Assembly: GCA_026770705.1 (NCBI GenBank)
Contig: JANJGN010000031.1
Coordinates: 1,054,001 to 1,118,000, forward strand
DNA: 64,000 bases
Direction of reading: 5' to 3'
From: Isurus oxyrinchus
Taxonomy: Eukaryota
The notes under the pieces were generated by a model. That model had not been told where the DNA came from and searched no databases. It saw only the letters and a list, made by a program, of their open reading frames with translations. Shown here one piece after another: positions 17,417 to 61,635 of this stretch. Each line of letters opens with the position of its first letter. Positions within the stretch are counted from its first letter, which is position 1. The translations under genes and the position numbers were made by a program.

Positions 17417-18329
17417 ATGCACTTACCGTGTCTCTTCATTATCCTCTGCCCTCTGTTACCAAGTAAGTATTCTAGATTTATGACAATACTGGCGCTAACA
17501 TTACGTCGGCGTTTTCATTAACTAATAACCTTTATCGAACTAGATTTGGAAGATAGGAGTCATTTTTGAATGATTACTTAATCTGTGTAGAACATGATAA
17601 TTGATCGAAAGTTTTTGGTGAATAATTTTGGCTCATAATTTTCTTTTAAATAAATAACCAATACATGGATCATCTTAACTTTATTAATGCTTATCGAACA
17701 GATTTTCGCGAATTACTGGCCATTTTTTTACTTGATGTCACTTTCTATCTATCTAATGCATAAATATCCATTTATTTTGTATGTATTTTATCTTTCTCTT
17801 CCTATGTATCAGTTTGTCTATCCATCTTTTATTTAGCGATCTATCTATCTAACTTTCGATCTATCCATTCATTCTTCCAATCATCCAACTATTTTTCCCT
17901 TTATCTGTTCATGATCTATCTATAATGTCTATCTACTATCTATTAATGTATCTGTCCATCTAGTTAACATAGTCAACATGGTTGAATGATGCGCTGAATT
18001 TTGTAAATATTCTCCTTATTTCTCCAGGTAAAACGCTAGCAGAGATTATTCACCAATGGCCAAGTCGGTTGACGTTGAACAAAGGCGAGCCAGCGGAATT
18101 GAACTGCTACCAGAATGACACCAGCAAGAACGTTATGCTGTGGTACCGGCAGTACGCCGGGCAGGGTCCCAGCCTAATCGGTTACTCTCGCACTGGAATT
18201 GCATCCACTTACGAAGAAAACTTTAAAAACGCGGTCGAGATTGTAAGGGCGGGGGACAAAACATGCACCTTGAAGATCTTCAAGGTTAAGACGGCTGACT
18301 CGGCGGTCTATTACTGTGCCAGCAGTGAG
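17417..18329 (+). CDS. TRBV: Intact TCR beta-type V segment (leader 17417-17462, V exon 18028-18329)
   Basis: Leader MHLPCLFIILCPLLP followed by GTAAGT at 17463; AG at 18026-18027. V exon ..IIHQWP..AELNCYQN..MLWYRQ..TLKI..ADSAVYYCASSE; CASS is typical of TRBV. Confidence 0.95.
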
Positions 18330-18368
18330 CACACCGATGAAAACTGCGCTGGTACCAGCACAAAAACC
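18330..18368 (+). other. 23-RSS
   Basis: CACACCG - 23 bp - ACAAAAACC. Confidence 0.93.
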
Positions 18369-19619
18369 AACAGGATGAACACCAGAACTGACTGCAAGGT
18401 ACAAGCCTTGAAAACAATTCACGTCTTCCCGCTTCACGGGCCGCTTTTAACATGTTGAGTGACACCCTCAGTTCGGTGTGAATGACAGGCAATATTAGAA
18501 GGTTCTAGGAAATGAGGGAGAGAGAGAAGTGGGGAAAAAGAGTTGCCCCGGATTCTCATGTTCATCGTCTTCGTTATTTTCATGTATATGTTAACATTCA
18601 GCTCCAGTCATTGTTCTGGACTTGATCAGTTAAATAGAATATTTAGCGATTTAAATAATGAAATATGTAAACCTCACCGCGGTGAAGTGTTGAAGAGGCA
18701 AACAATGATCCAACATACAATTTTCGAAACTTTAATTGATTCATTCTAGACAATAAATATCAAACATATTATATTATTCTTTTTAAAATACGCATTCAGA
18801 TTCAGTTCTGTAGACCTCCCGATTCTATTTCACAGCCGCATTGCCCCGGGTGCTTGAGTGAAATTAGAACAGAACTTTTATTTTCATGGTTAATTCAGCA
18901 CTTCTCCAACATCAATCGTCGCAAATTCAATCTAACATCCCGCAAAGATTTCAGCCCAGTTCCTGTGTTCAGGCCGTAACTGGGGCAATGAGGTTCAAAA
19001 AATGGCGTGGTGCTTCTGAAGGAGGAAGCACCGCTACATCTGCCACCTGAACAGAAAACAGTCCAATAACAAGCTGCAATATGGTCAGCCCGCTGTTGAG
19101 GTGCCACGTTAATCCGGGCAAAACATTTCAGGAGGCGAAGCTTCGTATTTTGATGGTTTACAGAGCGCGTTTGGTATAACGAAACTATTGAGACAGAAAA
19201 AGGTCCACTATGACAATGAAGAGAGATTAGCCTACATTCATGGCCACTTATTTTTGAGCAGCTCAAGGGGAGGCGGTGGAGAAGCGGCAATACCGTTGTA
19301 CTGGTAATCCAGAGACCCACGCGAATGCTCTGCGGACAACTGTTAAAATCCCATTAGAGCTGCTGGTAGAATTTAAATTCAATTAACAAAATCTGGAACT
19401 AAATGCTGGTCTCATAACGCTTGAACACATGAATCCCTTGTGAGTTTGTCGTAAAATCCGATCTAGGTTCACTAGTGCCCTTTAAGGAAGGAAATCTGCA
19501 GTCATTACCTGGCCTTGCCTCCAAGTGACTCCAGAGCCACATCAATGTGGCTGACTCTTAGCTACCATCTGAAATAGCCCAGCAAGCCACTCAGTTCGTT
19601 CAAACTCCTGGAAGGAATA

Positions 19620-38080: not shown

Positions 38081-40452
38081 ACATCATTAGTCAGTAATGT
38101 CATGAAATCCAACACAGATGCTGGTCCTAAATGGGACCAGAAATTTCAAGAAACATACACATGATACAAAGTCGAATTGGGAATCACAAATAGGCCAGGG
38201 ACACGCAACGGATACAGGACCTAAAGAGACACCAATATTTGGAAGGACAGCACAACAGACACTTAAGCATGAAAACAGAAAGTGGTGGAAAATACTCAGG
38301 AGATCCGGCAGCATCTGTGGAGAGAGAGAAACAGAGTGAACTTTTCAAGGCCAGTATTTCGGAAGGAGAGCATTTTGTACTAATATAGAATTGAGGGTAC
38401 AGGGGACAGCAAAGATGTGGATGTGTGTGAGAGGTGACAGCACATCCAAGTAATTATAGATATCACGCTCGAATGGAGGTTGCAATACAGAGTAGTGAGG
38501 GGAACAATGAATACATGTTAGTAAGCTCACGTTATTGGAGCGACTGGTGCCAGACGCACATGTTTAGGCCTCTATTTCATTGTTTAATGTTTTGTTTTCA
38601 TTCATGATTGGGAATGTGCCTGGGAAAAATACAAAATTTATTGTGCATCTCTATTGGCATTGTGAAGGCGGTGATGAGCCAACACAGTGCGTGTCAATTA
38701 TATTTTTACTTGGCAGCTTTAAGGTTTGCTCGTGCATTTCGGAGACAACCACATTGTTGTGAGCTTGGACTCACTGACCAGGCCAGATAAGAGAACCAGG
38801 TTTCCTTCCTTAAAGAGCTTTAGTGAACCAGATGGAGTTCTGTGACAATCCATTAGCTACATGATCACTATTACTGAAAATAGTGTATTAATGTCAATCC
38901 CAAATTCATTTAATTAAAATTGCATTTCCTGCCAACTTATCTGAACTCATGTCTCACGACTATTAGCCCACGTATCTAGACTCCAAGTCTAGTCTACGCA
39001 AGTAACTTACTCTTTAAGGTAATTACTCCCCTCAGTTGCCGTGGTGAAAAAATGCAATGTACGTGGGTTTGTTCTGCAATTACCGTGTGATGTTCTGCAT
39101 CGTCTGACATTAGACCCATGCAGCAGGCTGAATTTGTATTCATTTTGCACCTGTTGATCTATTTTAACATTGGAAGCTGTACTCTGCTTACCGCACATGC
39201 TGAGAATTAGTTTTATGCCTCTTCTTTCCCTTTGAGAAAGCTATTCATCTGGCCCCACTCTTAATACATCGCCCTGCAAGAATATATCGAGTTCCTTTTT
39301 TGAAGTTACTATTCATTTTCTAGCACCCTTTCAAAGAATGCACTGCAAACCATAACATAACTGTCACTTCTTTTCTGCAAGTCACCTCATTTGTCTTTAA
39401 TCAAAGTCCTCTGGTTCCCGACTCTAATTCCAGGGAAGCAGTTTCTCCCTTGCTACTCTATCGTAGCCACTAATATTTTTCAACAGCTCTATCAATTTCC
39501 ACGACCTTAAAATTCGTACCTCTAAGGAGAGCAATCGCTGATTCACTACTGTCTCCACAAAAGTGAATTCCCTCAGCCCTGGTACCATTCCAAGTCACTC
39601 ACCATCTTGACTTGGAAATATATCGCCGTTCCTTCACTGACGCATGGTGAAAATCCTGGAGCTCCCTCCCTAACGGTACTCTGGATGCACCTACACCACA
39701 TGGACTGCAGTAGTTCAACAAAGCAGTTCAAGGGCAATTAGGGGATGGGCAATAAATGCTGGCCATACCCATGAATGAATGAAGAAAATGTCTCACGTAA
39801 ATCCTGCATACCGTTGCCAAAGCTTTGATATTCTTCCTAAAGTGTGGTGTCTAAGAACGGGTCACAATACTCCAGCCTCATTCCTGGTACCATTCTGGTA
39901 AATCCCACCTTAGCCACCTATGCTCTAAGGAGACCAATCGCAGTTTCTCTCGTCTTGGCGCCTAATATAGATCCACCACCCCTTGTAACATTCTGGTTAA
40001 TATCCACTTATGCTCCTCTGTTCTGAACGGCATAAGAACAGCTTCTCCAGTCTCTCCATTAGAGAGTGCAATGTAACTCAACCAATCAAGGTTTATGCTA
40101 GCGAGGGGAACCAAGCCCACGTGGTGTCGAAGGCGAAGGATACTTTTTGAAGAAGAGATATGGACAGCGTCAATCAGTTTCCTTTCAGGAATACACCGAA
40201 TAACAGTCACAGAATCAGTTCCACTTTTTTATTTTCGTGAATGTATCCAGGTGAACATATCTAAAACAAATGAAATGTATTTATTGTAGACTTGTGTAGG
40301 ACCAAAAACACTATTCGTTTTTCGGCCTGGAGACTAATTGAAAAGGCACATGTGCAAGAGTGAGCCTTTATGTAACCTGGCGTTGTTGTTGTTTGATAAA
40401 GGCCTGCCCTTTGTCAGACTGCCTACCTTTCTTACTGTCTCTGTATGTTTCA

Positions 40453-40612
40453 CTATCTATCTGCCTATCNNNNNNNNNNNNNNNNNNNNNNNNNNNNNNN
40501 NNNNNNNNNNNNNNNNNNNNNNNNNNNNNNNNNNNNNNNNNNNNNNNNNNNNNNNNNNNNNNNNNNNNNNNNNNNNNNNNNNNNNNNNNNNNNNNNNCTA
40601 TTTATCTACCTC

Positions 40613-40653
<41 letters not shown>

Positions 40654-40712
40654 GTCTGCCTGCCTGTCTGTCTATCTGTCTATCTGTCTATCTATCTACC
40701 TTGCTATCTATG
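40453..40712. repeat. (TCTA)n/(TCTG)n microsatellite spanning an assembly gap
   Basis: 128 N at 40470-40597, flanked by TATC repeats. Confidence 0.95.
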
Positions 40713-41974
40713 TGTACATCAGATCTCAGGGCAGTAACCCAAGCATACTGGACAACAGGTTACAACAGAAACGAACACATTTCATACTGATGTTCATCTT
40801 GAGCACCAGTAAGAACGATGAGATGAAGGGGATGAAAGTGCGCTAGAAATAAAGGTGGAAATGCTGGGCATTTGTTTGATTGAAAGAGAGAAGGAAAATG
40901 TCGTAGGCACGAGCTGAATAAAGAACAAGAAATATAGGGGAATGCAGGGCGAAGTGATTTAAGGAAAAGCACCAAGAAAGAAAGGAAGAAATAAATAAAA
41001 AAATGAGAGAAGATGAAACAAGAGGCAGAAAGAAAAACAAAGAGTTGATGAATGAAAGCAAGTAAGAAATATGGAAAGAAAGGCAAAGGGCCAGAGGAAG
41101 CAATAAAGATCAGCAATGAAAGAGAAATAAGAAATGACATGAAAGGAAAAACAGGAAATATTGGTCGAAGCAAAGAAAGGTAGATAGGTAGAGGGACGTT
41201 TGAGTGGGCGAAAGAAAGAAGAGACATTTTTTAAAAAGTGGAATTAAAGAAGGACAGTAATGGGAAATATAGACAAAAGGACAGATCAATAGGAATAAAG
41301 ACTTGAAGAGGGGAAGCATGGCTAAGTGAAATAAAAAAAGCAATGTTAAAGAAGGAACTTCAGCTCCAAAAATGTTAACCAAGCAGCCACTTTGAACCGC
41401 ATGGAGGTGGAAGGAGCCCAGAGATACCTCGGAGAATATGAAAGGACAACAATTCAGTCACCTGTCCTCCAAACTGAAAGCACCACCATGGCAGGCAGCA
41501 CATTCGCTTAAACCACAGAGGGAAACTCGGGGACAATGACCTACTTTAAAACCCAGGCTGTCAGCGGAAAGCTGAACCACATCATCTGAAAACTCAGACA
41601 CCGCTGCTTTCATTTCACTTCATTCCGTGCAGCTGTGAGATATATTTTTTGTGCAGTTTGGGTATTGTTTTGAGTAAACATTTTCCAGAGATGTCGGATC
41701 AACCTTCGGAATGTTACTGGACATGAATTTTAGAACAAAACATCAGTTGATTTTGGCACTCAAACAGTTGATTGCTTTGACAAGCTATGAATACTTTCTC
41801 CAATGCTATAGAATATGCGCAAACCTTTGCTCGGTTCTCCTTTCTCTCATTGACAACATCCACTGCTGCTGCTGATATTTTTGCATTTTGTGTGTCCATT
41901 GAAGTAAGGAATCGGAATGGGTTGCGTGTTGGTTGCAGTCAAATAATTGGAAAAGTGAACAGATTCAGGGGCCA

Positions 41975-42555
41975 GAAGGAGGGAGAGGAAGAGAGAGAGA
42001 ATGAGAGAGAAAGAGGTAGAGAGAGGGTGACAAAGAGAGACAGGGGCAAAAGGAGAGATGAAGTGATAGAAAGATAGAGATGGAGACAGAGCGAGAGGCA
42101 GAGAGAGAGAGAGAGGAAGCGAGAAAGAAACAGAGGCAGATACATGCTGAGAGGGATGGTGAGAGAAAGACAGAGAGAGAGAGAGAGACATACAGATAGA
42201 TGAACAGGGAGTCAGAGATCAGGGAAATAGAAAGTTAGTGAGAGACAAAGCGAGGTAGAGAAAGAGAGGGAGAGAAACAGGGGAGAGACAGAAGGCTGGA
42301 TATGGAAAGGAAGAATGAAAAACAGAAGAATAGGGGAAACAATATATCAACCTAGAAAGTGAAAGGGAATGAAAGATGTAAGAAATAGAAAGAGAGAAGG
42401 AGTCAGGGAGCGAGGACCAAGAATGAAATGGACAGGGAAAGATGGTGGATAGATATGCAATGAGACATAGAGGGAAAGAAAAGAATTAAGGAGGCAGAGG
42501 GAGAGAGAGAAGAAGAAAACAGTGAGAGTGAAGCAGATGGACAGGAGAAGAGAAT
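41975..42555. repeat. GA-rich low-complexity tract
   Basis: Degenerate (GA)n; similar tracts at 31690-31930 and 40850-41360. Confidence 0.85.
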
Positions 42556-45211
42556 GAGTTATGTTTCTTCGTGATATCCCTTGATATTCTTATACAATAA
42601 CAGCTATCAATAGTCTATCTGCATTTGTAAGATTATTTGTAAATATTATGCAAAGCTCTTGGGATGAAACTCAAATAATGATGAGGAACACTGGTCTCTT
42701 TGTAGAAATTTTCTACTTATTCCTTAAACGATGCATAAGTAGAGAAAAAGCACAAAATAACAAGCGACCTATCGATACTAGAAAAACTGAGAACCCTGTA
42801 ATCTATTATATACGATTCTGTTCTCCGTTTCTTTCTACAATCTATTGGGTAAATTCTGGCAAGACTATTTTCGAATTAATGAGAAAGGGAAACGTACATG
42901 ACCTGTCGCAGTAACGGGGCTATGAGTTACAAGTGGTCTTCTATTACTTAACAGCGGACACAGATTTACCAAAATGACCCTCTGGTTGAGGAGCTTGAGT
43001 TGCAGAGAGAGAGTAGAGAAGAGGTTATTTGGAACTAATGGTTGACACTTTCAAGAGCATGCACATGCACGATGGGCTGAATCGCTTCCCTTTGTGCTTT
43101 AATGTCTGTTACTATATTTGAAGTTGAGAAGAACCCAAGCATTGGCAATCGACACTCAGTAGAATAATCGAACAAAGCTTGTATTTTCCCCAGAATTTCA
43201 CCTATTCAAATAACGGGAACTTAAAGAAATGAGAAGATGAAAGTATATTTTCATGTAGAAAGGGCAGGACAGGGCATACATTTGTTCCATTCACGTCCTT
43301 GGTGCTGATGGAGACTTAGTGTGATTCGCCAAAGTTACATCAGGCAGCGGGAATGGGTGAGGTGAAATTTACCCTACAGGCATTTACAATATTGCTGTTT
43401 TTCTGTCCCTCCTCTTTCGTGTGTTCTGTCGTTTATCAGTTGATTGAGTTCATTACTTTGTGATGACCAGTCAGACTTTCACTATAATGTGTCTATTATA
43501 CAATAAGAAAGCAGACAGCTTTATTATCATCAGAGAATCATATAATGACACAGAACAGAAAGAGACCACCCGGACTAATGTGCAATTATTAGCACTTTGA
43601 AAGAGCTACCCAATTATTCCCAATTCACTTCTTCCACATTGCCCTGATCCAGCCCCTGCTCAAGCAGCTATCCAGCTCTCATTCGAAAATTAAAATTTAA
43701 TCTGCATCCACCGACCTTACAGGCAGTACATTCCGGATCACCACAATTCGCTGCATAATAAAAGCGCCCTTATCCCTCTCTCTCTGCTTCTTTCACCGAT
43801 TATCTTAAATCTGTGTGTACTGGTAACCAGGACTGCTGCTATTGGAAACAGTCTCTCCCTATTTACTGTATTAAAACTCCTCATGATTTGAAACACGTCT
43901 ATAAAACCATCCTTCAAAATTCATTGCTCTATAGAGAACAATCCCAGCTTCTCCAATCTCTGCATCGAACTGAAGTATTCGATGCCTGGAACTTTTCAAT
44001 TAAATCTCCTCCTGCACTCTCTCCAAGATCTTGACAGATCATATTGCCACGCCTCATTATTCCGTCTAAAATGTGTCAATTCGCTTTTCTCTGCATTAAA
44101 GTGCATCTACCAACTGTCTGCCCATATCACCAGTCTGGAAATGTCCTGTAATCGTAGCACCTAGGGAGCGCAAGACTGCTGGAGGGTCAGTATTGAGGGA
44201 ATGCTGGACGGTTGGAGGGTGAGTACTGAGGGATTGTTGCACGGTTGGAAGGTTTAGAACTGAAGACCTGCTGCACTGTCGAAGGTTCAGTGCTGTGGGA
44301 GGCTGCACTGCCTGAGGATGAGTCATGAGGGAGGCTGCACTTTCGGATGGGATCGGTACTGAGGGAATGCTACAACGTCAGGGAGTCAGTACTGAGGGAC
44401 TGATGAACTATGGCAGGCCAGAACTGAGGGAAGAACCGGCCAGTCCTATTCCACTGCTTTATCTACGAGGCCTCAAAGTTGATTTCACTCAACTGCACAT
44501 CAAATTTCCTTTTGAAATTATTGATCGTGTCAGCATCCACAATCAGCGATTTCAATGTTATTGCCACTTCCTGTGTTGAAAAAGATCGCCATCCTACCCT
44601 CGCCCCCACTCTCCCCACGTGTCTTTTGCACAAAATCTCGATCTACTCCTTTTACCATCAGCTAATTGGAATAGTTGCTCTTTGTCTACATGAAGTAAAC
44701 GTGCCAGAACCGTGTACAGTTCCATCACATCGCCCCACAGTCTCCTTTGCTCCAAAGAGAACAGCCCCAACTTCCCCAACCAAAACGTTGTTGTTAAAAT
44801 CCTTCATCACCAGAAATACTCTGGTAAATATCCTCTGCACCTTCCCATGGACCCTCTCATCCTTCCAAAGTGTGTTGTCCAACACCATAGATTGCTGAAA
44901 GAATTGGAAAGAAGAACAATAAGTTAGCAAGTTAGCATGAGAATATTTTATGTGATCACTATGCATATGTAGATAGATGTGCGTCACAGTGCCCTCTGGT
45001 ATATTGTGGGAGCCGTTTTAATTGCGTCTTAACATGAGGTACATCGTAATTTGCACACAGTCTTATGTATTTCTTGCATTATTTGTTCAGTTAGTAATTG
45101 ATTTGCTGAATCCTCCACATGGTTTATTCAGAAGAAGACAAGGTTTACAGAAATAAATGTATGTTATTTGCAGCTAAAGTAAAATAGTATGTGTTTCACT
45201 CGTGGGCCTAC

Positions 45212-45539
45212 CAGCATTGATGGTTAACATTGGACTTGTTGCATTCGGTTGTATTCCTTCAGCATAGTGTGCATTCGACATACTTGGACCTGACGCAATC
45301 TTAGACCTCGAGCCTCCAGCGACTGCTGATGCTGTAGGATTCGTTCCTTTTCCTTCAGATGAAATTGACGTCAGCCTGAGTGCTTTTATCGTTGGCCTGC
45401 TTTCCCTCGCCATCGACAATCCATCGAATCTTGATGTTATCAGGATAGTAGCCAATTACAAGACGATCACCCCTTTCTCTTTAATATCTTCTGGAGAGGG
45501 TCCAAAGACAGCCAACTTTAACATTCTTAATCTCATGTT
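45212..45539 (-). pseudogene. TRBC: TCR beta constant region exon 1 pseudogene
   Basis: Across frameshifts it reads EHEIKNVK/AVFGPSPEDIKEKG/RLVIGYYPDNIKIRWIVDGEGKQANDKSTQADVNFI*RKRNESYSISSRWRLEV*DCVRSKYVEC/HYAEG..LTINA. Phase-1 GT donor at 45211-45210; acceptor reads TG. VFxPSxEEI, FYPD, W, YSxSSRLR and C are C-beta hallmarks. Confidence 0.9.
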
Positions 45540-46649
45540 CAGTGTAGAACTTAAACAACAATAAATGGTGAGAATTAAATCACTATGCGAATTTTAATCA
45601 GTGAAGCCTTTCGGACTTGGAACAATTTACTTCCTGGAAATTCCAATGTTTCCTGACCACAATGGTATTCGTTACTAATAAAGCACCTAATCAGATGTAA
45701 ACTGGGAATGCATTGCACCTTTTAACCAAGAACGGCGAAAGCCGACAATCTGAACCATTCCTTGGTCAATTGATGATGTGAGGTTTGTTTACCTATCGAT
45801 CGGAAAAGCTTTATCTGAATTCAGGTCCAACTTGTTTTCAATTTACTGGACTGTCAATCCATCCATTGCATTATCCAGGGCCCTTTCCAATCTCACTCTT
45901 GCCTTTTCCCCGGAATGCAATCTTAAGTTTAGGCAGTGCAGTAATGAAACGGTACCGCAAAGAGGAAGGATATTCGGCCATGGTGTGCGTGCTGGTTCTT
46001 TGGCAATCCATTTAATTAATCCCATTCCCTAGCTTGCTCTTCTGCCATATTTCTGCATACGATTTTCGGTAATTTTTCTCCATTTCCATTGTGAAAGTTC
46101 CTTTTTCTTATTTGTTCTTGGGATGTGAGCATCACTGGCAAGGGCAGTAATGTTGCCTCTCCCCCCTCCCAAATTCTTCCCGAGATCGCCCGACATCTGA
46201 GTAGCTGCTAGACCATTTCAGAGGGCAGAAAAGAGTCAACGACGTTGGTGTGGGTCTGGAGTCTAATATGGTCCAGGCCGGGTAAACCCGGCAGATTTCG
46301 TTCCTAAAGGGCATTGGGTTACAAGGTGGGTTTTACGGCAATCTAAAAATTTAATGGTTTCCAGTACTGAGTGAGACTAGTGGTGAATTCCTGATATATT
46401 AACTAACTGAATCGAAACTCCGCAGCTGCGATGGCGCCATTTGAATTCTTGTCTTGAAACATTAATTCACGCCTCAGTCACAATTTTCAATGGGCCGGGC
46501 TCAAAGCTGACTTTTGGCCCCACTCTCGGGATTCGCTTCTCTGTTGTTTATCTTTTATTATGTATTTTTCTTCATCAGTTTGATTTTTGTTTATCGATTA
46601 TTCATCTGTATGCTTTTATTATAAGAACATGATAAATGCAACGGCAACT

Positions 46650-48660
46650 TCTACTTCCATTTCACCTTCTCTGCCCTAAGGAAAACAAACTCAGTTTGTC
46701 TCACCACTCGATAGAAATGAAATCCCTCAGCCTCGGCAGCATTCTAGTAAACCTCTGCGATGCCCTCTGCAAGGCCTTGTGGCCAATAATTGGCCGTAAT
46801 ACTTCAGCCCAGACCTAACCAAGGCTTAATAACGGCAAAACCACTTTCATGTAGCTCGCGCCCTTGATGCAGTTTAGCGGAAGAGCAAATCAGACAGCAA
46901 TTGGATATGGAGTCAAATACGAAATTACGAACATACGATTGAGGAGCATTCTATTCTATACCCCTTTGCAGACTCATTGTCTCCCTTTCGGAATTTACTT
47001 TCCTATCTACCTTTGTGTTCTCAACAAATTTAACCATACATCATGTCTCTTTATTCAATGATGCAATTAGTAAATAGTTGAGGCTCCATTGCTGAGCCCT
47101 GTTCCACCCCACTAGTTATAGCTTGCTAACCCGGAATACACTCATTTGCCCATACTCCCAGCTCTCTCTTAGCGAGCTAATCCTCTATCCAGGCTATTAT
47201 GTTGACCCTTACACCATGACCTCTTTGTTTTGTGTAGAATCTTTAATGTGGCAGCTTATCAAACGTCTTTTTGAAATCCAAGTGCACCGCATTTACACCT
47301 TCCCCCTTAGCCACGTTGCTTGTAGTTCCTTAAAGAAATTAGCCAAACTTGATATGCCTTTCACAAAAGCATGTTGATTTTACCTGATTGCATTAAGATT
47401 TTGTATTTGCACTTTCATACCCTCCTTAATAATAGATTCTTCCATTTTCCCAAAGACAGATGTTAGGCTAACTGGTCTGCCGTTCCCTTTCTGTCTCCTT
47501 CCTTTCTTAAATGGAGGACTTACATTTGTTATTTTCCAACCTGATTGGCTCTTTCCAGAATCTAGGGAATTTGAGAAAATTACAACCAATGCATCTGCTT
47601 CCTCAGAGGCCAGTTCTTTTAAGGCCGGAAGGTGCGGGCCAACAGATCCAGGGGCTTATCAGCCTTTAGGTCTAATAGTTTTCTCAGTGACTTTTCCCTG
47701 GTGACTGCAATTATTTTAAGTTGCCCCTGTCTTTTTGCTCCTGATTTAAAGTATTTATGTGAGGGTATGTGTGTATCCTATACTGAAGACAAACACACAA
47801 TTTCTATTCAATGTTTCTACCATTTCCTTATTTCCCATTATTAATTCTCCAGACTCACTCCCCAGAGGAGCCATGCCCACTGCCATTGTTATTTTCCTCT
47901 TAAACACTTGTAGAAGCTTTTACTATCTGTTTATTACAATTCTAGCTAGCAATCTCACATATTATGTTTTCTCACTCCGTAGGTTTTACTAATTCTTTGT
48001 TGGTTTTTAAATTCTGCCTATTCATCTGACCTGCTGCTAAGCTTCACATAATTGTCCGCTTCTTCTTTAAATTTCACACTGCCTTAAATTATTTAGTTAT
48101 CCACGGATGGTGTAACCTTCCCCTAACGTCTTACTTTCTCACTGAGCGTTATGTAATCTCTCCTTAATATCTGCCACTGCATCTCTCCTCACCTTAACTT
48201 AATTTCCAAGTTCATTTCAGCCAGCTCAGTCTTCATACCCTCGTATTTGCCTTTATTTAAAGTTAAAACACGAGTCCTTGAACCACTCATCTCTCCCTCA
48301 AACTGAATGCGAAATTCAATCGTGTTATGATCGCTGCTATATGCTCTAACGATATAAGGTCATTAATTAATCCTGGCTCATTGCACACTGCCAGGTCTAG
48401 AATAGATTGCTTTCGGGTGGGGCATAGAACGTGCTGCTCTAAGAAATTGTCCAAAAAACACTACGTGAATTAATTTTCCAGGCTATCTTTTCGGATTTGA
48501 TTCGCCTAATCTATCTGTGGATTAAAATCACCCATGATTATTGCTGTATCTTTCTTAGAAGTCCTTATTCTTTCGTACTGTCTACCCTATCCAACAGTGT
48601 ACTTATTGCTAAGGACCTAGAGACTAATCCCACAAGTCACTCCTTGCGTTTGTATTTGTT
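46650..48660 (-). mobile_element. Decayed CR1 ORF2 fragments
   Basis: IFSNSLDSG..WKITNVSP.FKKG..RPVSLTSV motif at 47380-47589, plus endonuclease-like sequence. Confidence 0.75.
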
Positions 48661-49392
48661 ATCTCTGCGCCCTGGCTGCTGATCCACCGGCAGTGCATCA
48701 CTCCCTCTTTAGTTTCCTACGGTAGTGCAGCCCTCCCTCTGAACTGCGTCCCCACAATTGCATCGTTCCGTCAGTACTGACGCTCCGACGTTGCCATGTT
48801 CTATCAGTAGAACCATTGAGAAAGACAATATGGATTTTATATTCAACTCTGCGGCGTGAAAACTGAATCTGGCCGCGACTGGCTCACAAGTGACAGGACT
48901 ACCAACTGAAACACATGTGACAACCAAACCCACATCTCCTCCAAGGTCCAATTGGCTGATATTGGTCTGTTAAGCGACCTTTTTAAATAAAGCGTCACTT
49001 TAGAAATCCTCAATCATGGAGCTGCAATGGAGGCGGGGTTCTTTGTTTTTACTTTGTTTCATATTTAACCGGGTATTAGCCAATTAAAGTTGTTAGATAC
49101 ATTGGCGAAAGCGGAGCGGTAGATGTCACAATGGCCTCAATAATACAGGCAGATATTTGATTTCCTTCTGCTTTCTGGGCCCCTGGTGCTGCAATTCCCT
49201 CCCTAAACGTTTCACCTTCTCTCTACCTGTAAGACGGTCCACCAAAGCTACCAAGCAACCATAACAGCTCCTTCTCTGACCCGATGTGATTGTTGGTTCA
49301 TATAACCTCCTTGGAAAGTTTTGATTACGGGCATCGATGTTGCTATATAAATGCAAGTTTTTGTTTCGTTACAACCCCTTGTGGGTATGGTG

Positions 49393-49431
49393 AGTTTTTG
49401 AACTGAAGACTCTCTTGCTTGCACCTCTGTG
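49393..49431 (-). other. 23-RSS
   Basis: CACAGAG (49431-49425) - 23 bp - TCAAAAACT (49401-49393). Confidence 0.92.
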
Positions 49432-50101
49432 GTGCTACTGGCAGCACAGTAATAGGTCCCCTCATCTTCTGGCTTCGCCCCGGTTATATTCAGGATAATG
49501 TTTTTCATATCCTTCCTCGTCGCTTGGTACCTATCAGAGACGCCGCTTTCTTTTTCTATGCCGGTGTTGTAGCTGTATGAGCGTAAAAGCAGTCGCAAAC
49601 TCCCGGCTTCCTTTTGTTGGTACCAGTACATGTACTCCAGCGATTGACTTTGCCGGCAGTTGAACTCCGCACTTTTCCCGGTTTCAACGGACAGTCTCGT
49701 TGTTGATTGGGAGATCTGGTGCTCGCCCTGACAAATCACATCTGCAACAGAAAAAAAGGAATTAAGTTTAAAGGGGTGGCTGGGAACGTTGTGGAAAGCA
49801 GATCAGTGGCGCTCCTGTTAATAATGAGCAAATGGCACAGCAACATCATGGAATGAATACATAGGAGGGTAATTGGCAATAACCAAAATCTGCTCTTCCA
49901 GAGTCTACGCTCCACCATTACCTCCCACAAAATTGCGTTTCCCCGACTGGCCCATCGCTGAAGGCAGGAAGTTCAACTTCTAACATTCAGTTAAAAACTT
50001 TCAATTTCTGTGATAATAAACTCATATAACGGGGTCATAGGATCAAATGACTTACATGGCAGCAATACGACAATGATGCATGAATCGAGACCCAAATACA
50101 T
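49432..50101 (-). CDS. TRBV: Intact TCR beta-type V segment (leader 50101-50056, V exon 49741-49432)
   Basis: Leader MYLGLDSCIIVVLLP followed by GTAAGT; pyrimidine tract and AG at 49743-49742. V exon ..QISQS..AEFNCRQ..YMYWYQQ..ILNI..EDEGTYYCAASS has no stops. Confidence 0.93.
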
Positions 50102-50252
50102 TCTGCGCAGATAGTGTTCGTCTCCGACTTTTGTTTTCCTGCTTGTTCTATAGCTTGCTGATTGTATCAACGGGCGATATTGCAGTTGCAACCTTATCAG
50201 AGGGAAGGATATTAAAGCGTCGTATGCGACTGATCAGTTCGTCTGATGCGCC

Positions 50253-50258
50253 TTTATA
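50253..50258 (-). promoter_or_regulatory. Candidate TATA box of the minus-strand V
   Basis: TATAAA about 150 bp upstream of the leader ATG. Confidence 0.35.
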
Positions 50259-52964
50259 TGTCAGCAGTTGCACAAGTGGAAGGCTGCTTGCTTTAAGCCC
50301 CATGTCAGCGACGAAAACGCAAGACCTAAGGGGACACTCCCAGTGCGATAGGAAGTAAGTACTTCTGTGCCGGAAGAGACAGTACCGAGGGAGCACTGAA
50401 CTGCCGGAAGGGCTGTAAGGGGGGAATGCCGCACTTTTGGAAGTATCACATAGTATTGCCCTATTGGATAAGTACAGAGGGATTACTGCTATGTCGGGGC
50501 GCCAGTAATGAATGAACGCTGAACGTTCTTTCTGCTGCTCTTCCAGGCAGGTCCCACATCCTCAATTTAGAAAAAAAAGCAGGACAATTCTCATAGTATA
50601 TCCTGGGGAATAATGTAGCCCTCAAAGGACTTCACTGACACAGGTTATCTTATATTTGTTACATTGCTGTTGTCGGAGTCTGTTGCTCACTATGGCTTCT
50701 GCCTTTCTACGGTGCCCAGACTTCAAACAAACGTCATTGCCCGTGAAGCTTAGTTGACGCGTTGAGATAGTTAAAGGCTATCGAAATTGCTGCAAGTTAA
50801 AGATATACTTAAGGGAAAGTTAAAAATCGAAAACAATTTTAATATTCCTCGTGGGATGTGCGCAGCTGCTCTTGAACTGATTAGCTTACGAAGCCATTTA
50901 CAGAGTCAACCTCATCTGGATTTACATGTAGGCCAGATAAGGACGTCAGATTTCCTTCCTCAAAGGAAGGAAATGTCCTAGGCGGACTTGTATGACAATC
51001 GATAACAGTATCGCGATTACCTTAATCAGCTTGATTTTCATTTCCAGATTTGTTATTGATTGCATTTAAATTTCACCAGTTGCTGTGTTGGGATATGAAT
51101 CCAAGTCCCCAGTGCATCAGCCTAACTTTCTGGATTATTATTAGCCCATTAATTTAACCACTACGCCACTGTCGCATTAAGGGTCTTCCATATGTTGTTG
51201 TGTAATGCACATGGGATGAGGTACTTTTCTCCGTCCGCATAATACTAAGTGCAATAATATGAGAATTTCACTGTCGCAGTGTCAAAATCCTTGAACTTCC
51301 TTCCTGAGAGCACCGTGGTTTTTTCTCCAACACTTGGACTGCAGTGGCTCAACAAGGCAGTATACCACCACTCGCTCAACGGCTATTAGGTGTGGGCAAT
51401 AAATATATTCGTTCAAGGGACGTGAATGTCACTAGCTAGGCTTGCTTTTATTGCCCACTTCTAATTGTCCTTGAGTAGGTGGCTGCCTTAGGAAGTGGTC
51501 TATGCGTCTGGCCTCTAGTGGCCGCGAAAGATCTGCAATGGAATTTCAATATTAACTGTCATCACTTTCAGTATTTGGTTACCAGACGCCAACCAGCTCC
51601 ATCTGGCGTATTAAAACGCCATCGGTAATTGCTACTTATTTTCAGCGAGCCTTGTTTATTACCTGTGCCCTTGTGCAAACTTTTTTTTTAACCAGTATTT
51701 GTTATAAGGTGCAAAAATGGGAAAATGCCTAGACTTAATAACGTACTTGGAAGTATTTCAACAAAAAATGATAATTTATTGGAACAATCCCCTTATGAAG
51801 ACGTTGCTGACAGATCACACTGGGCGATCAAAGCCCCCATTTAAATGATCTCTTTCAGAAAATACTATTTTGTGATAGATGAGTAAGCTGACACATCACA
51901 AATATATCGTTTTCGTTCTGCTTGTGGTTCCTAAAGATCTTTAACCCTTCGACCATTGTTGGCTTGATGCCTGATATTGTAGACAAATTGATGAATATTC
52001 AGTTTGTTTTAACAATTCAATGCGTATTGAGGCTATTAACAAGTCGAGCACTTATTGCCTATCCCAGTTGTCCTTGACAAAGTGGGGGTAAGCCCTTTTC
52101 CTGAATGAACCTGAATGGGTGAATAACCCCGTTCCGGAGCAACCCACTACTGTGGGTGTCAAGGTACACGAAGGCCAAACAGGAGGAGGACGGAGGAGTT
52201 CCTTCCCTAAAGGACATTGTGGAGCCAGAGGCTATTATTTTTGCGAAAATCTAGTTGTTCTGGTGTTACCAGTGTTGGTAATAGCATGATAACCGATTTA
52301 CTGAATGAACTCAATTCAAATATCCTAGGTGCTGAGACTTATGTCACAAATCATTGTTCAAGGCTTCGAGATTAGTAAACGTCCCTGCTGCCGTTCAGTG
52401 AGCAATACCATCATTATTGTAGCATGGGATTAATAGAATGGGAAAAATGCAGCGAGAAGTGGACAACCTCACATTTTCCCACATTCTTAGCTTCCATTTT
52501 TGCCAACTAACAACTTATCGAAATCCTTTTGCAGACTCTTTGTATCCTCCTCACAATTAACTTTGCCACTTGCTTGTGTATCATCAGCAAAGTTGGCTAC
52601 AATACAGTTTGTCACTTAACCTAAGTTATTAATATAGATGATAAATAGTTGCGGTCTTAACGCTGATCTTTGAGGCACTCCATCAGTTCATTTTACCAAC
52701 CAGAAAAATACGTCTTTATTAACTTTCTGTTTCCTATTAGTTTCCCAACCAATACCCATGCTAAAATATTACAGCCACCATGATATCTCCTGGAGTAATC
52801 CTTTTTGTGGCACCTTATTGAAAATCTTCTTAAGAATGCAAATGCACTACATCAACTACTTCGCTTCAGCCCGCTCTGTTTGTGCCATACTCAAAAAACG
52901 CTAACAAATTTGTAAAACAGGATATCACTTTCATAAAACCATGTTTTTTTAGGGCGTAACAGAG

Positions 52965-54090
52965 AAGAACAAAGAACAGAGAAAACTACAGCACAGAAAC
53001 AGGCCTTTTGGCCCTCCAAGCCTGCACCGATCATATTGCTTGTCAACCGAAAGCATTTTGCACTTCCGGGGTCCGTATCCATCTATTTCCATCCTATTCA
53101 TGTATTTGTCAAGCTGCCTCTTAAACACCTCCATCATAACTGCTACCATCACCTCCTCTGGCAGCGAACTACAGATACCCACTACACTCTGCATAAAAAA
53201 CTTGACCCACACATCTCTTCTAAAGTTTTCTCCTCTCACCTTAAACCTATGTCCCCTACTCATTGACTCGTCCACCCTGGGAAAAAAGCTTCTGACGATC
53301 TACTCTGTCCATGCCACTCATAATTTTGTAAACTTCTGCCAAGTTGCCCTCAATCTCCGTTGCTCTAGTCAGATCAATCCGAGTTTCTCCAACCTCTCCT
53401 CATAGCTAATAACCTCCAGGCCAGGCAGCATCCTGGTAAACCTCCTCTGCACCCTCTCCAACGCCTCCCTATCCTTCTGATAATGTGACGACCAGAATTG
53501 CATGCAATATTCCAAGTGTGGCCTAACCAAGTTTCTATACAGCTGCAGCAGGATTTCCCAGCTTTATACTCAATACCCCTGCCACATGCCTTCCTGACTA
53601 CCTTATCCACCTGCCTTGCCACTTTCATTTACCTGTGGACCTGTATACCCAGATCCCTCTGCCCGTCAATGCACTTAAGGGTTCTGCCATTTACTGTATA
53701 ATTCCTACCTGTATTAGACTTTCCGGAATGCATTACCTCACATTTGTCCAGATTAAACACAATCTGCCATTTCTCCGCCCAAGTCTCCAAGCGATCTATA
53801 ATCCGTTGTATCCTCTGACAATCCTCTTCACTATCTGCAACTCCTCCAACCTTAGTGCTGTCTGCAAACTTACTAATTAGCACAGTTACATTTTCTTCCA
53901 AATCATTTATGTATGCTACAAACAGCAAAGGTCCCAGCGCTGATCCTATGGAACACCAAAAGTCACAGATCTCCATTCAGAAATGCACTCTTCCACTGCG
54001 ACCCTCCGTCTTCTATGAACAAGCCAATTCTGTATCCATCTTTCCACCTCACTTCTGATCCCATGCGACATTACTTTCTGTACTAGTCTG
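52965..54090 (-). mobile_element. 5'-truncated younger CR1 copy
   Basis: LGPLLF..YINDL..SKFAD motif; 3' UTR shared with copies at 13650 and 61851. Confidence 0.9.
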
Positions 54091-56339
54091 GTTAGTAATT
54101 AGGTTAGTGGTTAGGTTAGTGTTGTGTTGTCCCCTTGTCCCACGTCAATCCTCTGGGAATCTGAAACATGGAAGAAAATCGACAATAGTCTGAATTGGGA
54201 GACAAGGCATACTATTCAGTCAATGCAGCAACATCAGAGAAAATTCTGGATAACTCGGGTTCTGGAATATCACAGTACATTTTCGAATCGATAAGAGCTT
54301 AAAAGTCATACAGCACATGAAGCAAGGCATTCGGCCCATCCTGTTTGTGACAGTCCTTGAAAGAACTATCCAATCAGCCCAATCCCCGAATGTTCTCCTG
54401 TAAATGTATCTTTCAACGCAATTTATTCCCAATTATTCTTTTCATTAGAAAATAGAAAAAAGTTCGCCAAGTAGAATATACATTGGTTCCACCACCAACT
54501 ATTTGAATAAAATAACACAATAGCTTCCTACATATAAAAGAAAAGATATAAACTGAATTAATTATGTTATATACAGATCATTAATTATGTTTGCTAACGG
54601 AACTAAGTTGAAATACAATAAAAGCAGCGCTTGGAAGTTAGCTAACACTGCATGAGCAATGCAAAGGCAGAAGATTCAATTCCATCCTCCAAGGAAACGC
54701 AAGGTGAGGACCGGCAGAGGAAGCAGGAGAAAGAAAATATAGAGCCTCCTGTGGCGGACACCCATCAAAAGCGTGGAAATAACATCACGGGTAATACAGA
54801 TCTTCCTATCTGAAAGCTACGAGAGGAAGTGCATGATTATGCCATGGAATGTTCCTACCAGTTCCTGATCTCTCTTGTCCAAGAGAGGAGTGTTTTAGAT
54901 ATTTCACATATTAAATTTAAGGCAAATACTGCATGCCTGAAATCTGAAATAAACTTTGGTTCTTAGGAGAAGTCTTTTTTTTTACAGGGGAAAGCATGGA
55001 CGCAGTCCTCCAATACCAATAATTTTGCAGGCGAGTATCCCGCATTTGGCGACAACCCAGGCATCAGCACACCCAGAGTGCAATGGGGTAACCTCATCCT
55101 GGGAGCACAACCTTCATGATCATTGTTTCTCCCCTGCCAGGCAAGTCTTATTGGACTCAAAAATTTAGGCCGGAATTTCCGAGCCCCGCAGCATCGAATT
55201 TGGATTGTACCCCAGAGCTGAAATGGGGAACCCATGTCAGAACTTCCAAAGGAGGGGTTTGCACTACAATTGCCCCTGGGCAATTGCCTGCTCTAGAAAC
55301 CATCGGGAAATGCAATTTAATTCACAAACTTCGGGTGGTTCTGGCTGGGTTAGACAAATAGCTGCTGAGAAAAAGTTAGAAGAATTAAAACCCCTTCAAA
55401 CTTCTGGGCAACTAAGCCAAAGGCACAGAACTGCTCCCTCCCACGTCACGTGAGGATCCCCACGCCACCGACCTTCCAGGAAATTACCACCAAGCCCCTA
55501 AACCCCAGCACCCACCCACCCACCCCCGCAGCATCCAATTGGCTCCCTACACGTTATTCCCACCCCATGACACACCAAGCGAATGCACCCAAACCGCCCC
55601 GATTCGGTGTCACCCATCATTCCCTGCAAGCACGACACCCACTGGAACTGACCCCACCAGACATCTCCCAACCCCCGTTGTCCAGACGCCACACATTGCA
55701 GCATCTGACCCGACTGGACACGCACCTCACCAGCACTGATCTTTGAATTGTCCTGACCCGGCAGGACCCCTGCCCACCCTGATATCCAACAACCCCTCCC
55801 AAACTACAGTCACCCCCTCCCCATGTTCCATTTCCATTCCCCTCTGATGTGGGCACCCGCCACACCACACCAATGTCCGATACACTCCACTCCTCCCCCG
55901 ACATCCGAACACACACCCAATGATATTCGACACCCCTCCACCCCCCCAGATATCCGACACCCACCCCCTACCCAGTCCGTGATACCCAATCTTCATGGTA
56001 TCCGAAACAAGCATTCCACCCCATCCCGATGTCTGCCCGCCAAATACCCTAACCCCCACCCGACCTCTGAGCCCCCATACTACCCAAACCCTATCCACTT
56101 ACTTTAGTCACTTACCTTCACCCAGGCCTGTCCATTTCAATCGGAGCTTTAAACTTTCCTGGTTTATGGCAGCTGGTGTGGTAAAACCGGGGCAAGACCT
56201 TCTTCAATCCAACTGTGCTGGACTGTGACGCTGGGCTTCAGGAACACCTGTGCTACCTGCGCCTTACCAGGCTTGAGAAAGAACTCTGAACAAAAAGTGC
56301 ACTTATGACATTTGTCAGGTAGAAGATGCAATTTAGTAC

Positions 56340-57370
56340 CACTCTCAATAAAGAAGGTTCAGAGAGAAAGTGAAAGAGGAAATAACAGAATCAAAAAAAG
56401 AGCATGAAAAGAGACAGGCAGTTAACATAAACGAGTCTTCTCTTGGCACACATATATTAAAAAGATGGTAAAAGGAAGCCTAGGGCGATTAGATACCAGA
56501 AATAGGGTTTACACATGGAGACAGGGGCATCGCTGAGGTATTAAATGAATACTTGGCATCAGTCTTTACCGAGGTCGAGGATGCTATGCAGGCTACAGTG
56601 AAAGAACTAGTCCTTAATAGCCAGAGAATTTAAAATGGATGAGGAGGAGGTATTAGATAGGGTTTCTGTGCTTAAAGTTGACAAGGCAGTCGAACCAGAT
56701 GAGATGCATCCAAGGATACTGAGAGGAGTGAAAGTGGAAATTGCAGAGCCACTGACAATATTTTTTCAGTCTTCCTTAGACTCAGGGGTGGTGGCAGGGG
56801 AGTGGAAAATAGTAAAGGTTACGCCCTTGTTCAAAAATGGGGTAAAGGTAAGTCCAGCAATTACAGGCCTGTTAGTTTAAGTTTGGTGGTGGGGAAACAT
56901 CTGGAAACATGAATCGGGACAGAATTAATAGTCACATGGACAAACGCAGGTTAATTAAGGAGAGCCAGCATTGATTTCTTAAGGGAGAATCGTGTCTGAC
57001 TAACATGCTGGAGTTTATCAAAGAGTGTTGATGAGAGCAATGGTGTTGGTGTGGTGGAAATGGATTTCCAACAGGCTACATAACATAATTTTCGGAACGG
57101 TTAAAACTCATTGAATAAAAGGGTCACTAGAGATGAGGATGCAGAATTTTCTGAGTCACAGTGAACAGAGATTAATGGTTAATTTAAGTTTTCAGGGGAG
57201 AGCAATATTTGTAGTGGAGTTCCCAAGGGACACTTGTTCTTCCTGATAGATATTGATGATCTAGAAATTGGCCTGCAATAGCTGATACAATATTTATAAG
57301 CATTGTAAACTGTGGGGAGGGACAGTGTAGAACTTGAAAAGGACATAGCCAAGTTGGTGGTATGGGCGGA
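56340..57370 (+). mobile_element. Decayed CR1 ORF2 fragment
   Basis: PDEMHPRILR..IFFQSSLDSG..WK..VTPLFK.G motif. Confidence 0.8.
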
Positions 57371-57614
57371 ATTTTGAAGGCAGCAAGGTGCTTGATCGGG
57401 CAGCTGTATCAGGCGTTTCTGTGTGACAGTGTTGTCAGCGTCCTGGGTGATTCTGAAGCACTGCAACCCATCGCCAAATGCTCAGAAAAACTCCACCTCT
57501 TTTGTGAGGTTAACGCTCAGGATCTTCAGAATTGACAACCTGTCGTCCACTGCTCGTGTGATTTCACATCATGTTCTGAAGCCCTGTTTATGTTGAGCTT
57601 CGCTGTTTCTGTAA

Positions 57615-58160: not shown

Positions 58161-58289
58161 TGATGGGGGGAGGGGGGAGTTGATACAGTGTCGGATAGTC
58201 TCTACTGAGACTGCGTCACCCCCACTCCATCCTCTACAGTGCCATCTGCTACTTATTCAATGATACTATTTCAGACAATGCTACCATTG

Positions 58290-61500: not shown

Positions 61501-61596
61501 CGTTAGCACTTTCAGAAAACAAACGCAAGCACTGTGGGCCGAATGGCATTCACTTGACCTGCATAATTTTCTGAAAGGTTTTTATGATCCATTTAG

Positions 61597-61635
61597 AGTT
61601 TTTGTTGAGATCCTCCATCTCTTTGCGTCACTTTG
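61597..61635 (-). other. 23-RSS with defective heptamer
   Basis: CAAAGTG - 23 bp - ACAAAAACT; the essential CAC is changed to CAA. Confidence 0.88.

What the first reader, a model, noticed from the sequence alone, without database searches (positions are those of the whole stretch)
45102..45539. Hidden TCR-beta constant pseudogene inside the V region
Seen: a 328-bp minus-strand exon with the C1-set C-beta pattern (VFGPSPEDI, GYYPDNIKIRW, YSISSR, SKYVEC), two stops, about three frameshifts, first Cys changed to Arg and a dead acceptor. A possible connecting-peptide remnant (KPCGGFSK) lies at 45125-45102. It is invisible in the ORF track. From recall it closely resembles shark C-beta. Inference: a former second or duplicated TRB constant gene, implying the locus once had more than one D-J-C unit.
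Basis: partly seen in the sequence, partly recalled or inferred. Interest (0 to 1): 0.8.

Follow-up and report, generated by a model that had tools for sequence, protein, structure and literature searches.

The report
Dead TCR-beta constant exon among V genes
A broken, long-dead copy of the first exon of a shark T-cell-receptor beta constant gene lies between beta-chain V genes, a fossil showing that a further constant gene once stood there.

Summary
On the minus strand, 45539-45212 is a 328-nt exon. Read through three frame breaks and two in-frame stops, it aligns end to end with exon 1 of shark TCR-beta constant genes (TRBC). Identity is 39-54% to 12 shark chains, 31% to a sawfish and 20-26% to bony vertebrates.

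In a library of 1.84 billion proteins, a shark TRBC was the only strong single-domain match: 34.4 bits against at most 12.8. Trees place it inside the cartilaginous-fish TRBC clade (100/99 and 98/99).

It keeps its donor GT, followed 87 nt later by a probable relic of the small cysteine exon. The acceptor reads TG. No J, D, transmembrane or cytoplasmic relic is in the window.

A second species carries the same relic at about 96% identity, and none of its listed differences touches a stop. The gene was therefore probably dead before the two species split.

It is not close to any functional TRBC found, so its age and parent gene are unresolved. That the locus once had more than one D-J-C unit is plausible but not shown. 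This is an ordinary pseudogene of a known family. No earlier scan note describes it.

The parts
45212..45539 (-). Pseudo-exon 1 of a TCR-beta constant gene (C1-set Ig domain), 328 nt
   Evidence: tblastn E down to about 1e-19 against shark TRBC. Full-length alignment, 39-54% identity to 12 shark TRBC over 104-106 columns. Pfam C1-set E 0.0029 on the 41-aa piece. Inside the TRBC clade in both trees.
45540..45541 (-). Would-be splice acceptor, reads TG instead of AG
   Evidence: Sequence. The exon start is fixed by alignment of the first residues to the start of shark C regions. The splice phase is assumed from established knowledge.
45513..45513 (-). Frame break 1: one extra base
   Evidence: Frameshift-aware alignment and piece check.
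45455..45466 (-). Frame break 2 around the first-cysteine column, with TAA at 45458-45456 in the incoming frame
   Evidence: The exact place and the fate of the Cys codon are ambiguous.
45355..45357 (-). In-frame stop TGA
   Evidence: None of the listed differences in the second species lies here.
45301..45303 (-). In-frame stop TAA
   Evidence: None of the listed differences in the second species lies here.
45269..45270 (-). Frame break 3: three codons of the alignment are represented by one base. The second species has 7 more bases here.
   Evidence: Alignment. Read laying reports ATCCCAT put in behind 45269 in both runs of organism B.
45210..45211 (-). Splice donor GT kept, in phase 1
   Evidence: Sequence. 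The exon end aligns with the end of exon-1-equivalent residues of shark TRBC.
45126..45209 (-). Relic of intron 1, ending in a pyrimidine-rich run but with no AG
   Evidence: Sequence. This is inference.
45102..45125 (-). Probable relic of the small connecting-peptide exon (interchain-cysteine motif C-G-x-x-S-K)
   Evidence: The pattern C-G-(1-2 residues)-S-K occurs once in 127,996 six-frame positions of the window, and that once is here. All 12 panel tails start x-C-G-x-S/T-K/N. The two bases before it would complete a Glu codon with the exon-1 donor, as in most panel chains.
44909..46019 (.). Single-copy island that holds the relic, bounded by high-copy repeats at 44101-44908 and 46020-46322
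   Evidence: Contig word depths of 27-56 inside the island against thousands to 212,000 in the flanks (table 2).
46650..48970 (-). Decayed LINE (endonuclease and reverse-transcriptase pieces) between the upstream V and the relic
   Evidence: Translated pieces, recognised by eye as LINE-like. Pfam named RT and endonuclease domains only in other LINE copies of the window; the one piece from this stretch that was tried, 47383-47655, gave no family.
49329..49703 (-). Open V-beta exon 3.7 kb upstream, same strand, with heptamer-23-nonamer signal at 49431-49393
17991..18383 (+). Open V-beta exon (CASS end, 23-spacer signal) on the opposite strand, 27 kb beyond the relic's 3' side
   Evidence: Its closest relatives include a Scyliorhinus torazame V whose gene number follows that of a TRBC on the same contig.
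40470..40597 (.). Run of N, 4.5 kb on the 3' side of the relic. Missing exons could lie in it.

Best explanation
This is a non-processed pseudogene relic of a TCR-beta constant gene. Exon 1, its donor, a short intron and probably the small cysteine exon survive on a 1.1-kb single-copy island among V-beta segments. A whole constant gene, most likely with its own D and J segments, once stood here on the minus strand. V segments lay upstream on the same strand, with oppositely oriented V segments beyond its 3' end. The gene then lost function. The acceptor changed, frameshifts and stops accumulated, and the D-J part and the transmembrane and cytoplasmic exons were deleted or overwritten by LINE and SINE insertions. 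It now does nothing: it cannot be spliced to a J segment and cannot encode an anchored chain. Its death predates the split of the source species from a related species.

Shown: TRBC identity, the lesions, the genomic (intron-bearing) nature, the V-beta context, the presence of an orthologue, and stops that no listed difference touches.
Inferred: that a full D-J-C unit was once here, how it was lost, and that the neighbouring open V segments are still used with a constant gene elsewhere.
For: Identity:
- phmmer of the 41-aa piece against 1.84 billion representatives gave 39 proteins at E up to 0.001.
- Re-scored per domain, the 187-aa Mustelus asterias TRB chain (named) reached 34.4 bits. The other 38, all multi-domain proteins, reached at most 12.8 bits.
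- tblastn: 18 of 30 TRB chains hit the exon at E below 1e-6.
- Alignment identity is 39-54% to sharks and 20-26% to bony vertebrates.
- Trees give 100/99 and 98/99 for the cartilaginous-fish or shark TRBC clade that holds it.

Genomic, not processed: the donor GT is kept. The cysteine-motif relic lies 87 nt on, the pattern's only occurrence in 127,996 positions.

Dead: see the lesions. There is no transmembrane or cytoplasmic relic; the best HMM hit has E 0.033, on the other strand and upstream. There is no J relic; the best has E 0.51. Between the upstream V and the relic, the only recombination signal is the V's own.

Old: organism B has a single-copy contig of 1094 nt over 44741-45802 with 39 differences and 7 gap letters. 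None of the 31 listed differences touches the three stop codons or frame breaks 1 and 2. Of the 16 listed differences in the exon, 6 are silent in the aligned frames and 10 change the residue, so nothing suggests constraint.

Context: V exons with 23-spacer signals lie on both sides.
Against: - No D or J relic supports a full D-J-C unit.
- Eight of the 39 differences in organism B's contig were not listed, so a shared lesion could differ there.
- The N run at 40470-40597 could hide the 3' exons.
Neither the parent gene nor the age could be set.
- Against solved structures, which hold mostly mammalian chains, the 41-aa piece gave only generic C1-set hits. No T-cell receptor is among the 60 shown.
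- Pfam's C1-set score of 18.4 bits is below the cut-off of 21.
Confidence: 0.78

Rival explanations
1. The relic was the only constant gene of a separate, paralogous TRB cluster that has since lost it. The event would then be the death of a whole sister locus, not the loss of an extra D-J-C unit within one locus.
For: Sharks show two TRBC lineages. The second clade has 91/90 support. In Mustelus asterias the two lie on contigs of 62,999,645 and 31,568,507 bases. The relic is not close to either lineage: at most 54% identity.
Against: Three V exons in the window are open and keep heptamer-23-nonamer signals, although the constant exon was probably dead before a species split. That suggests the V segments are still used with a constant gene in cis. 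Openness alone is not proof of use.
Confidence: 0.1
2. It is a fragment of a constant gene carried here by a transposon or by repair of a break. A working gene never existed at this place.
For: Only about 440 bp of gene-derived DNA remains, on a 1.1-kb island between high-copy repeats. LINE pieces lie on both sides.
Against: It sits in the expected place and orientation for a constant gene: downstream of same-strand V segments and upstream of oppositely oriented ones. An inverted V after the C exon is described as a shared trait of beta and delta loci (passage of PMC12227049). It also carries intron sequence and its donor.
Confidence: 0.09
3. It is a C1-set exon of another family (Ig light chain, another TCR chain, MHC) or a chance match.
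For: The PDB search gave Ig heavy-chain and MHC class II beta domains first.
Against: Those are per-domain scores of about 7-9 bits, against 34.4 bits to shark TRBC. The alignment is end to end, including the TRBC-specific start of the exon. Tree support is 98-100. Shark alpha, gamma, delta and light-chain constant domains were not fetched as direct comparators.
Confidence: 0.02
4. The exon is still used, for example in a sterile or regulatory transcript.
For: None. The RNA-labelled run was small: 116 million letters, kept as contigs only.
Against: No contig of that run lies on the exon, apart from a piece of about 35 nt that carries another copy's letter. The two species differ more in the exon (16 listed differences in 328 nt) than in the flanks.
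Confidence: 0.01

Closest known systems
Functional shark TRBC genes. Examples: Mustelus asterias XP_078097841, and the Heterodontus francisci 'T-cell receptor homolog', Hemiscyllium ocellatum and Pristiophorus japonicus TRB chains.
   Same: Same domain from first to last residue of exon 1. The exon start, the F/Y-Y-P-D-N-I strand, the conserved Trp, the S-I-S-S-R strand and the second Cys are all shared. Identity is 50-54%. That is within the 50-60% these genes show to each other between orders.
   Different: Frame breaks, stops and a TG acceptor. No transmembrane or cytoplasmic exons and no J segments upstream. It is not close to any one of them, whereas related genera share 90-93%.
Duplicated D-J-C clusters of bony-vertebrate TRB loci: two in mammals (recalled), two TRBC in channel catfish (abstract of PMC8656973), and paralogous TRB regions in salmon and squamates (search listings and abstracts).
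   Same: More than one constant gene in or near one V array, arising by duplication.
   Different: Those copies are intact and used, and sit side by side after the V array. Here one dead exon lies between V segments of opposite orientation.
Inverted V segment downstream of the constant gene (TRBV30 type). This is stated to be shared by beta and delta loci in a passage of PMC12227049.
   Same: On the relic's strand, V segments lie upstream at 49-64 kb. V segments of the opposite orientation lie beyond its 3' end at 1-18 kb.
   Different: Several V segments lie on the far side, not one, and 27 kb of repeats lie between. Whether they derive from such an inverted V was not tested.

Membership tests
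TCR-beta constant gene (TRBC) | C1-set Ig domain: Pfam PF07654, conserved Trp and two Cys | tested here: inconclusive
   Pfam C1-set E 0.0029, 18.4 bits, below the cut-off of 21, on one 41-aa piece. The other 4 pieces gave nothing. The Trp and second Cys are present; the first Cys column is ambiguous.
TCR-beta constant gene (TRBC) | Closer to TRBC than to any other C1-set family | tested here: met
   34.4 bits to shark TRBC against at most 12.8 bits per domain for the other 38 hits from 1.84 billion representatives. Inside the TRBC clade at 98-100 support. Shark non-TRB constant domains were not fetched as direct comparators.
TCR-beta constant gene (TRBC) | Full-length colinearity with exon 1, including the TRBC-type start | tested here: met
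   Alignment over 104-106 columns from the first residues to the last before the donor.
TCR-beta constant gene (TRBC) | Exon-intron plan: phase-1 acceptor, phase-1 donor, then a small exon with the interchain Cys | tested here: inconclusive
   Donor GT in phase 1 is present, the acceptor is TG, and the C-G-x-x-S-K relic lies 87 nt on. The plan is recalled from mammals.
TCR-beta constant gene (TRBC) | Transmembrane exon with the conserved Lys, and a cytoplasmic tail | tested here: not met
   An HMM of 12 tails against all six-frame pieces of the window gave a best E of 0.033, on the wrong strand and side. An N run at 40470-40597 was left unread.
TCR-beta constant gene (TRBC) | D and J segments with recombination signals upstream | tested here: not met
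   No J motif in six frames, J-HMM best E 0.51, and no 12- or 23-spacer signal in 45500-49460 other than the V's own.
TCR-beta constant gene (TRBC) | Open reading frame and usable splice sites (a working member) | tested here: not met
   Two in-frame stops, three frame breaks and a TG acceptor. It is a pseudogene of the family, not a working member.
TRB locus | V segments of beta type with 23-spacer signals nearby | tested here: met
   V exons hit the V parts of TRB chains. Heptamer-23-nonamer follows the V exons at 5978, 18330 and 49431.

The most novel reading that the evidence does not exclude
The relic is the last trace of a third, old C-beta lineage that had its own compact cassette: V, then D-J, then C, then an inverted V. 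After repeats are removed, only about 1.3 kb separates the upstream V's signal from the exon. On this reading the shark TRB region grew by copying whole cassettes, much as shark antibody genes are organised in clusters. Cassettes that lost their C then handed their V segments to a surviving D-J-C. The lineage might still be intact in other sharks or rays.
Probability: 0.15. Interest if true: 0.6.

Novelty: new member of a known kind. Interest (0 to 1): 0.35.

Why it matters
The gene map of the TCR-beta region in cartilaginous fishes is barely described. A review passage says only that shark TCR genes are in the translocon arrangement (PMC6795676). My searches found no shark TRB map and no report of a TRBC pseudogene.

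A dead constant exon between V blocks of opposite orientation is a landmark for reconstructing how the region was built by duplication, inversion or loss of D-J-C units. It also gives a neutral marker shared by two species. For annotation, it warns that a C-beta-like hit inside the V array is not a second working constant gene.

Beyond that, it is an ordinary pseudogene.

Tried and rejected
- **PDB search.** The 41-aa piece gave only generic C1-set hits. It is not informative about the family.
- **Pfam on the other pieces.** Nothing found.
- **Species naming.** Two searches with V ORFs gave no hit and a best of 64% to Heterodontus francisci.
- **Further exons, J and D segments.** Nothing found.
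- **Large inverted duplication around the relic.** A self-comparison of the window found none, only repeats.
- **Origin of the relic.** A weak sister link to the Hemiscyllium/Chiloscyllium type-1 TRBC (69/85). Grouping with the second lineage is not rejected (p-AU 0.093). Placing it outside all functional shark TRBC is not rejected either (p-AU 0.32).
- **Dating.** Not possible without the DNA of a functional TRBC.
- **Papers.** I saw passages of PMC10322711, PMC5931798, PMC12227049 and PMC6795676. For the rest I saw search listings and abstract starts only.
- **Closed supplements.** Supplementary Tables 2-3 of PMC10322711 are said to list trb V, D, J and C elements, including those of a bamboo shark. 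They may bear on the number of C genes, but supplements are closed.
- **My own errors.** One search used a last piece shifted by one base and was replaced. The identities printed run on into the intron and are not used.
Full report
**What is there.**
The minus strand of 45050-45620 has no long open frame. The stop-free pieces that matter are 45540-45514, 45512-45459, 45480-45358, 45354-45304, 45300-45271 and 45269-45213. No ORF of 20 aa or more spans them in frame. The window has 43.5% G+C and one run of N at 40470-40597.

**Which family.**
- Pfam sees a C1-set domain only in the 41-aa piece: E 0.0029, 18.4 bits, below the cut-off of 21. The other 4 of the 5 pieces gave nothing.
- Against solved structures the same piece gives generic constant-domain hits (IgG, IgA and IgE heavy chains, MHC class II beta). 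The best E is 0.003, and no T-cell receptor is among the 60 shown.
- The decisive search was phmmer of that piece against 1.84 billion representatives, which gave 39 proteins at E up to 0.001. Thirty-eight are long multi-domain proteins whose scores are sums. Re-scored per domain they reach at most 12.8 bits.
- The remaining hit, 187 aa, reaches 34.4 bits in one stretch at 58% identity. NCBI names it 'T cell receptor beta chain MC.7.G5-like isoform X2', Mustelus asterias. It reads as a J segment plus a constant region with a lysine-bearing membrane span.
- With it I collected 29 relatives among 155 candidates. They include TRB chains of ten named cartilaginous fishes, nurse-shark and horn-shark cDNAs, a giant salamander, teleosts and a bear.

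**Strength and extent of the match.**
- In tblastn of 30 of these chains against the window, 18 hit 45271-45540 at E below 1e-6. These are all the cartilaginous-fish and two unnamed metaclust entries. The best is near 1e-19 (horn shark, 57.8% over 64 residues). The other 12 score 8.8e-4 or worse.
- A frameshift-aware alignment of my own and a MAFFT alignment of the exon read through with X at each break show colinearity from the first residues of the C region to the last residues before the donor.
- Identity over 104-106 columns is 54% (Pristiophorus), 52% (Heterodontus), 51% (Hemiscyllium) and 50% (Mustelus type 1). It falls to 39% (Chiloscyllium type 2), 31% (Pristis) and 20-26% (seven bony-vertebrate chains and one unnamed entry).
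- Functional shark TRBC exons are themselves only 50-60% alike between orders, and 90-93% between related genera. The relic is therefore a normal member by sequence, with no close partner in the panel.

**Trees.**
- With 23 rows, the cartilaginous-fish TRBC clade that includes the relic has support 100/99.
- With four long rows left out (two unnamed entries, Pristis, bear), 19 rows remain and support is 98/99.
- Inside the clade the relic is a weak sister of the Hemiscyllium/Chiloscyllium type-1 pair (70/83 and 69/85).
- Holding it with the second lineage is not rejected (p-AU 0.093), and holding all functional shark genes apart from it is not rejected either (p-AU 0.32). Its parent lineage is unresolved.

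**Anatomy and lesions.**
- The exon runs from 45539 to 45212, which is 328 nt.
- The two bases before it are TG where an acceptor AG is expected. The phase-1 J-to-C splice is assumed from established knowledge.
- The donor GT at 45211-45210 is kept, in phase 1.
- The lesions are one extra base at 45513, and a frame break in about 45455-45466 with a TAA in the incoming frame. There is also an in-frame TGA at 45357-45355, an in-frame TAA at 45303-45301, and about 8 missing bases at 45270/45269.
- Whether the first cysteine became Arg or survives in a third frame depends on where the second break is put.

**The possible second exon.**
- The motif at 45125-45102 resembles the start of all 12 panel tails, x-C-G-x-S/T-K/N, with one extra residue.
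- The pattern C-G-(1-2)-S-K occurs once in the 127,996 six-frame positions of the window, namely here. It lies 87 nt after the donor, on the same strand.
- The two bases before it would complete a Glu codon with the donor's G, as in most panel chains. A pyrimidine-rich run precedes it, but there is no AG.
- I take it as a probable relic, with odds of about 0.6. The pattern was chosen after seeing the panel.

**What is missing.**
- An HMM of the 12 tails (connecting peptide, membrane span, cytoplasmic end) found nothing in any six-frame piece. The best E is 0.033, on the plus strand at 47750-47989.
- No J motif, strict or relaxed, looks like a J segment. A J HMM has a best E of 0.51.
- The only recombination signal in 45500-49460 is that of the upstream V.
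- The N run at 40470-40597, on the 3' side, was left unread and could hide exons.

**Surroundings.**
- V exons that hit the V parts of TRB chains lie on the plus strand at 888-1160, 5659-6000, 9118-9490 (frame-shifted), 12350-12448 (fragment) and 17991-18383.
- On the minus strand they lie at 49703-49329, 57613-57467, 61755-61633 (fragments) and 63903-63802.
- Three open ones carry heptamer-23-nonamer signals, the V-beta type. The two V blocks therefore face each other, and the relic lies between them on the strand of the right-hand block.
- Between that block's last V and the relic lie a decayed LINE and a very high-copy short repeat. The relic sits on a single-copy island at 44909-46019.
- Pfam names reverse transcriptase and endonuclease in other LINE copies of the window. 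Eight of the 10 ORFs tried gave no family.
- A passage of PMC12227049 states that an inverted V after the C exon is shared by beta and delta loci. Read on the minus strand, the arrangement here fits that plan.

**Other species and RNA.**
- The stretch 44900-46400 is held by four runs of one sample (organism A, shares 0.73-0.91). It is also held, at a share of about 0.23, by 16 runs of a second species label (organism B, 6 studies). Names are coded.
- Laid on 44000-47000, organism A's contigs tile the relic without differences.
- Organism B's contigs cover it at single-copy depth. One contig of 1094 nt lies on 44741-45802 with 39 differences and 7 gap letters, about 96% identity.
- The 7 letters are an insertion behind 45269, at frame break 3. 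Part of that lesion is therefore specific to the source species.
- Thirty-one of the 39 differences were listed. None lies in the three stop codons or at breaks 1 and 2.
- In the exon, 16 listed differences comprise 6 silent and 10 replacing changes in the aligned frames. Two of organism B's letters restore residues that functional genes conserve. Nothing suggests constraint.
- The gene was therefore probably dead before the two species split, subject to the 8 unlisted differences.
- The one RNA-labelled run (116 million letters, contigs only) puts nothing on the exon, apart from a piece of about 35 nt that carries another copy's letter. That piece is probably mRNA of a working TRBC. This says little about expression.

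**What it is and how it came about.**
- The relic carries an intron and a donor, so it is a DNA-level copy, not a retrocopy. It lies where a constant gene belongs relative to the V segments.
- I therefore read it as the remains of a complete constant gene, probably a D-J-C unit, that decayed in place (confidence 0.78).
- The rivals are the only constant gene of a dead sister cluster (0.10), a moved fragment (0.09), another C1 family (0.02) and a still-used exon (0.01).

**Novelty.**
- My paper searches found no map of a shark TRB region and no TRBC pseudogene in a cartilaginous fish. Most subscription-journal papers are not in that library.
- The scan's own notes hold nothing on it.
- It is a new member of a known kind, of modest interest.

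Noticed in passing
Proteins P0033, P0041 to P0055; not in the window: Sharks seem to have two old TRBC lineages. The second clade (Mustelus 2, Scyliorhinus 2, Ginglymostoma, Chiloscyllium 2) has 91/90 support. In Mustelus asterias the two lie on contigs of 63.0 and 31.6 Mb. NCBI names several of these TRB chains 'immunoglobulin lambda-1' or 'kappa light chain-like'.
   Followed up: partly
window 17991-18383 (+); proteins P0070 and P0041: The V exon at 18 kb is 56% identical to Scyliorhinus torazame scyTo_0004487. That gene's number follows scyTo_0004486, a TRBC, on the same 554,701-base contig. A V of this kind may sit next to the constant gene there.
   Followed up: no
window 888-18383 (+) versus 49329-63903 (-): The two V-beta blocks of the window face each other across 31 kb of repeats. 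A neighbouring scan note reports a further orientation switch starting at about 63.8 kb.
   Followed up: partly
window 45305-45340: A short contig present in DNA runs of both species and in the RNA-labelled run matches about 35 nt of the exon. It carries the letter that gives the conserved Leu (place 45317). It is probably a working TRBC copy.
   Followed up: no
window 52967-54069 and 61842-62935: A direct repeat of 1.1 kb at 84% identity inside the minus-strand V block, with short inverted copies at 13651-13929. It may be a repeat element or part of a duplicated V unit.
   Followed up: no
window 25739-26496: A tandem array with a unit of about 120 bp at 78-83% identity. It gives repetitive ORFs.
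   Followed up: no
window 40300-42600: CT-rich low-complexity DNA on both sides of the N run at 40470-40597. It gives long Leu/Ser-rich pseudo-ORFs.
   Followed up: no
window 46020-46322 and 44101-44908: Very high-copy repeats, with summed contig word depth up to 212,000, shared by both species and present in the RNA-labelled run.
   Followed up: no
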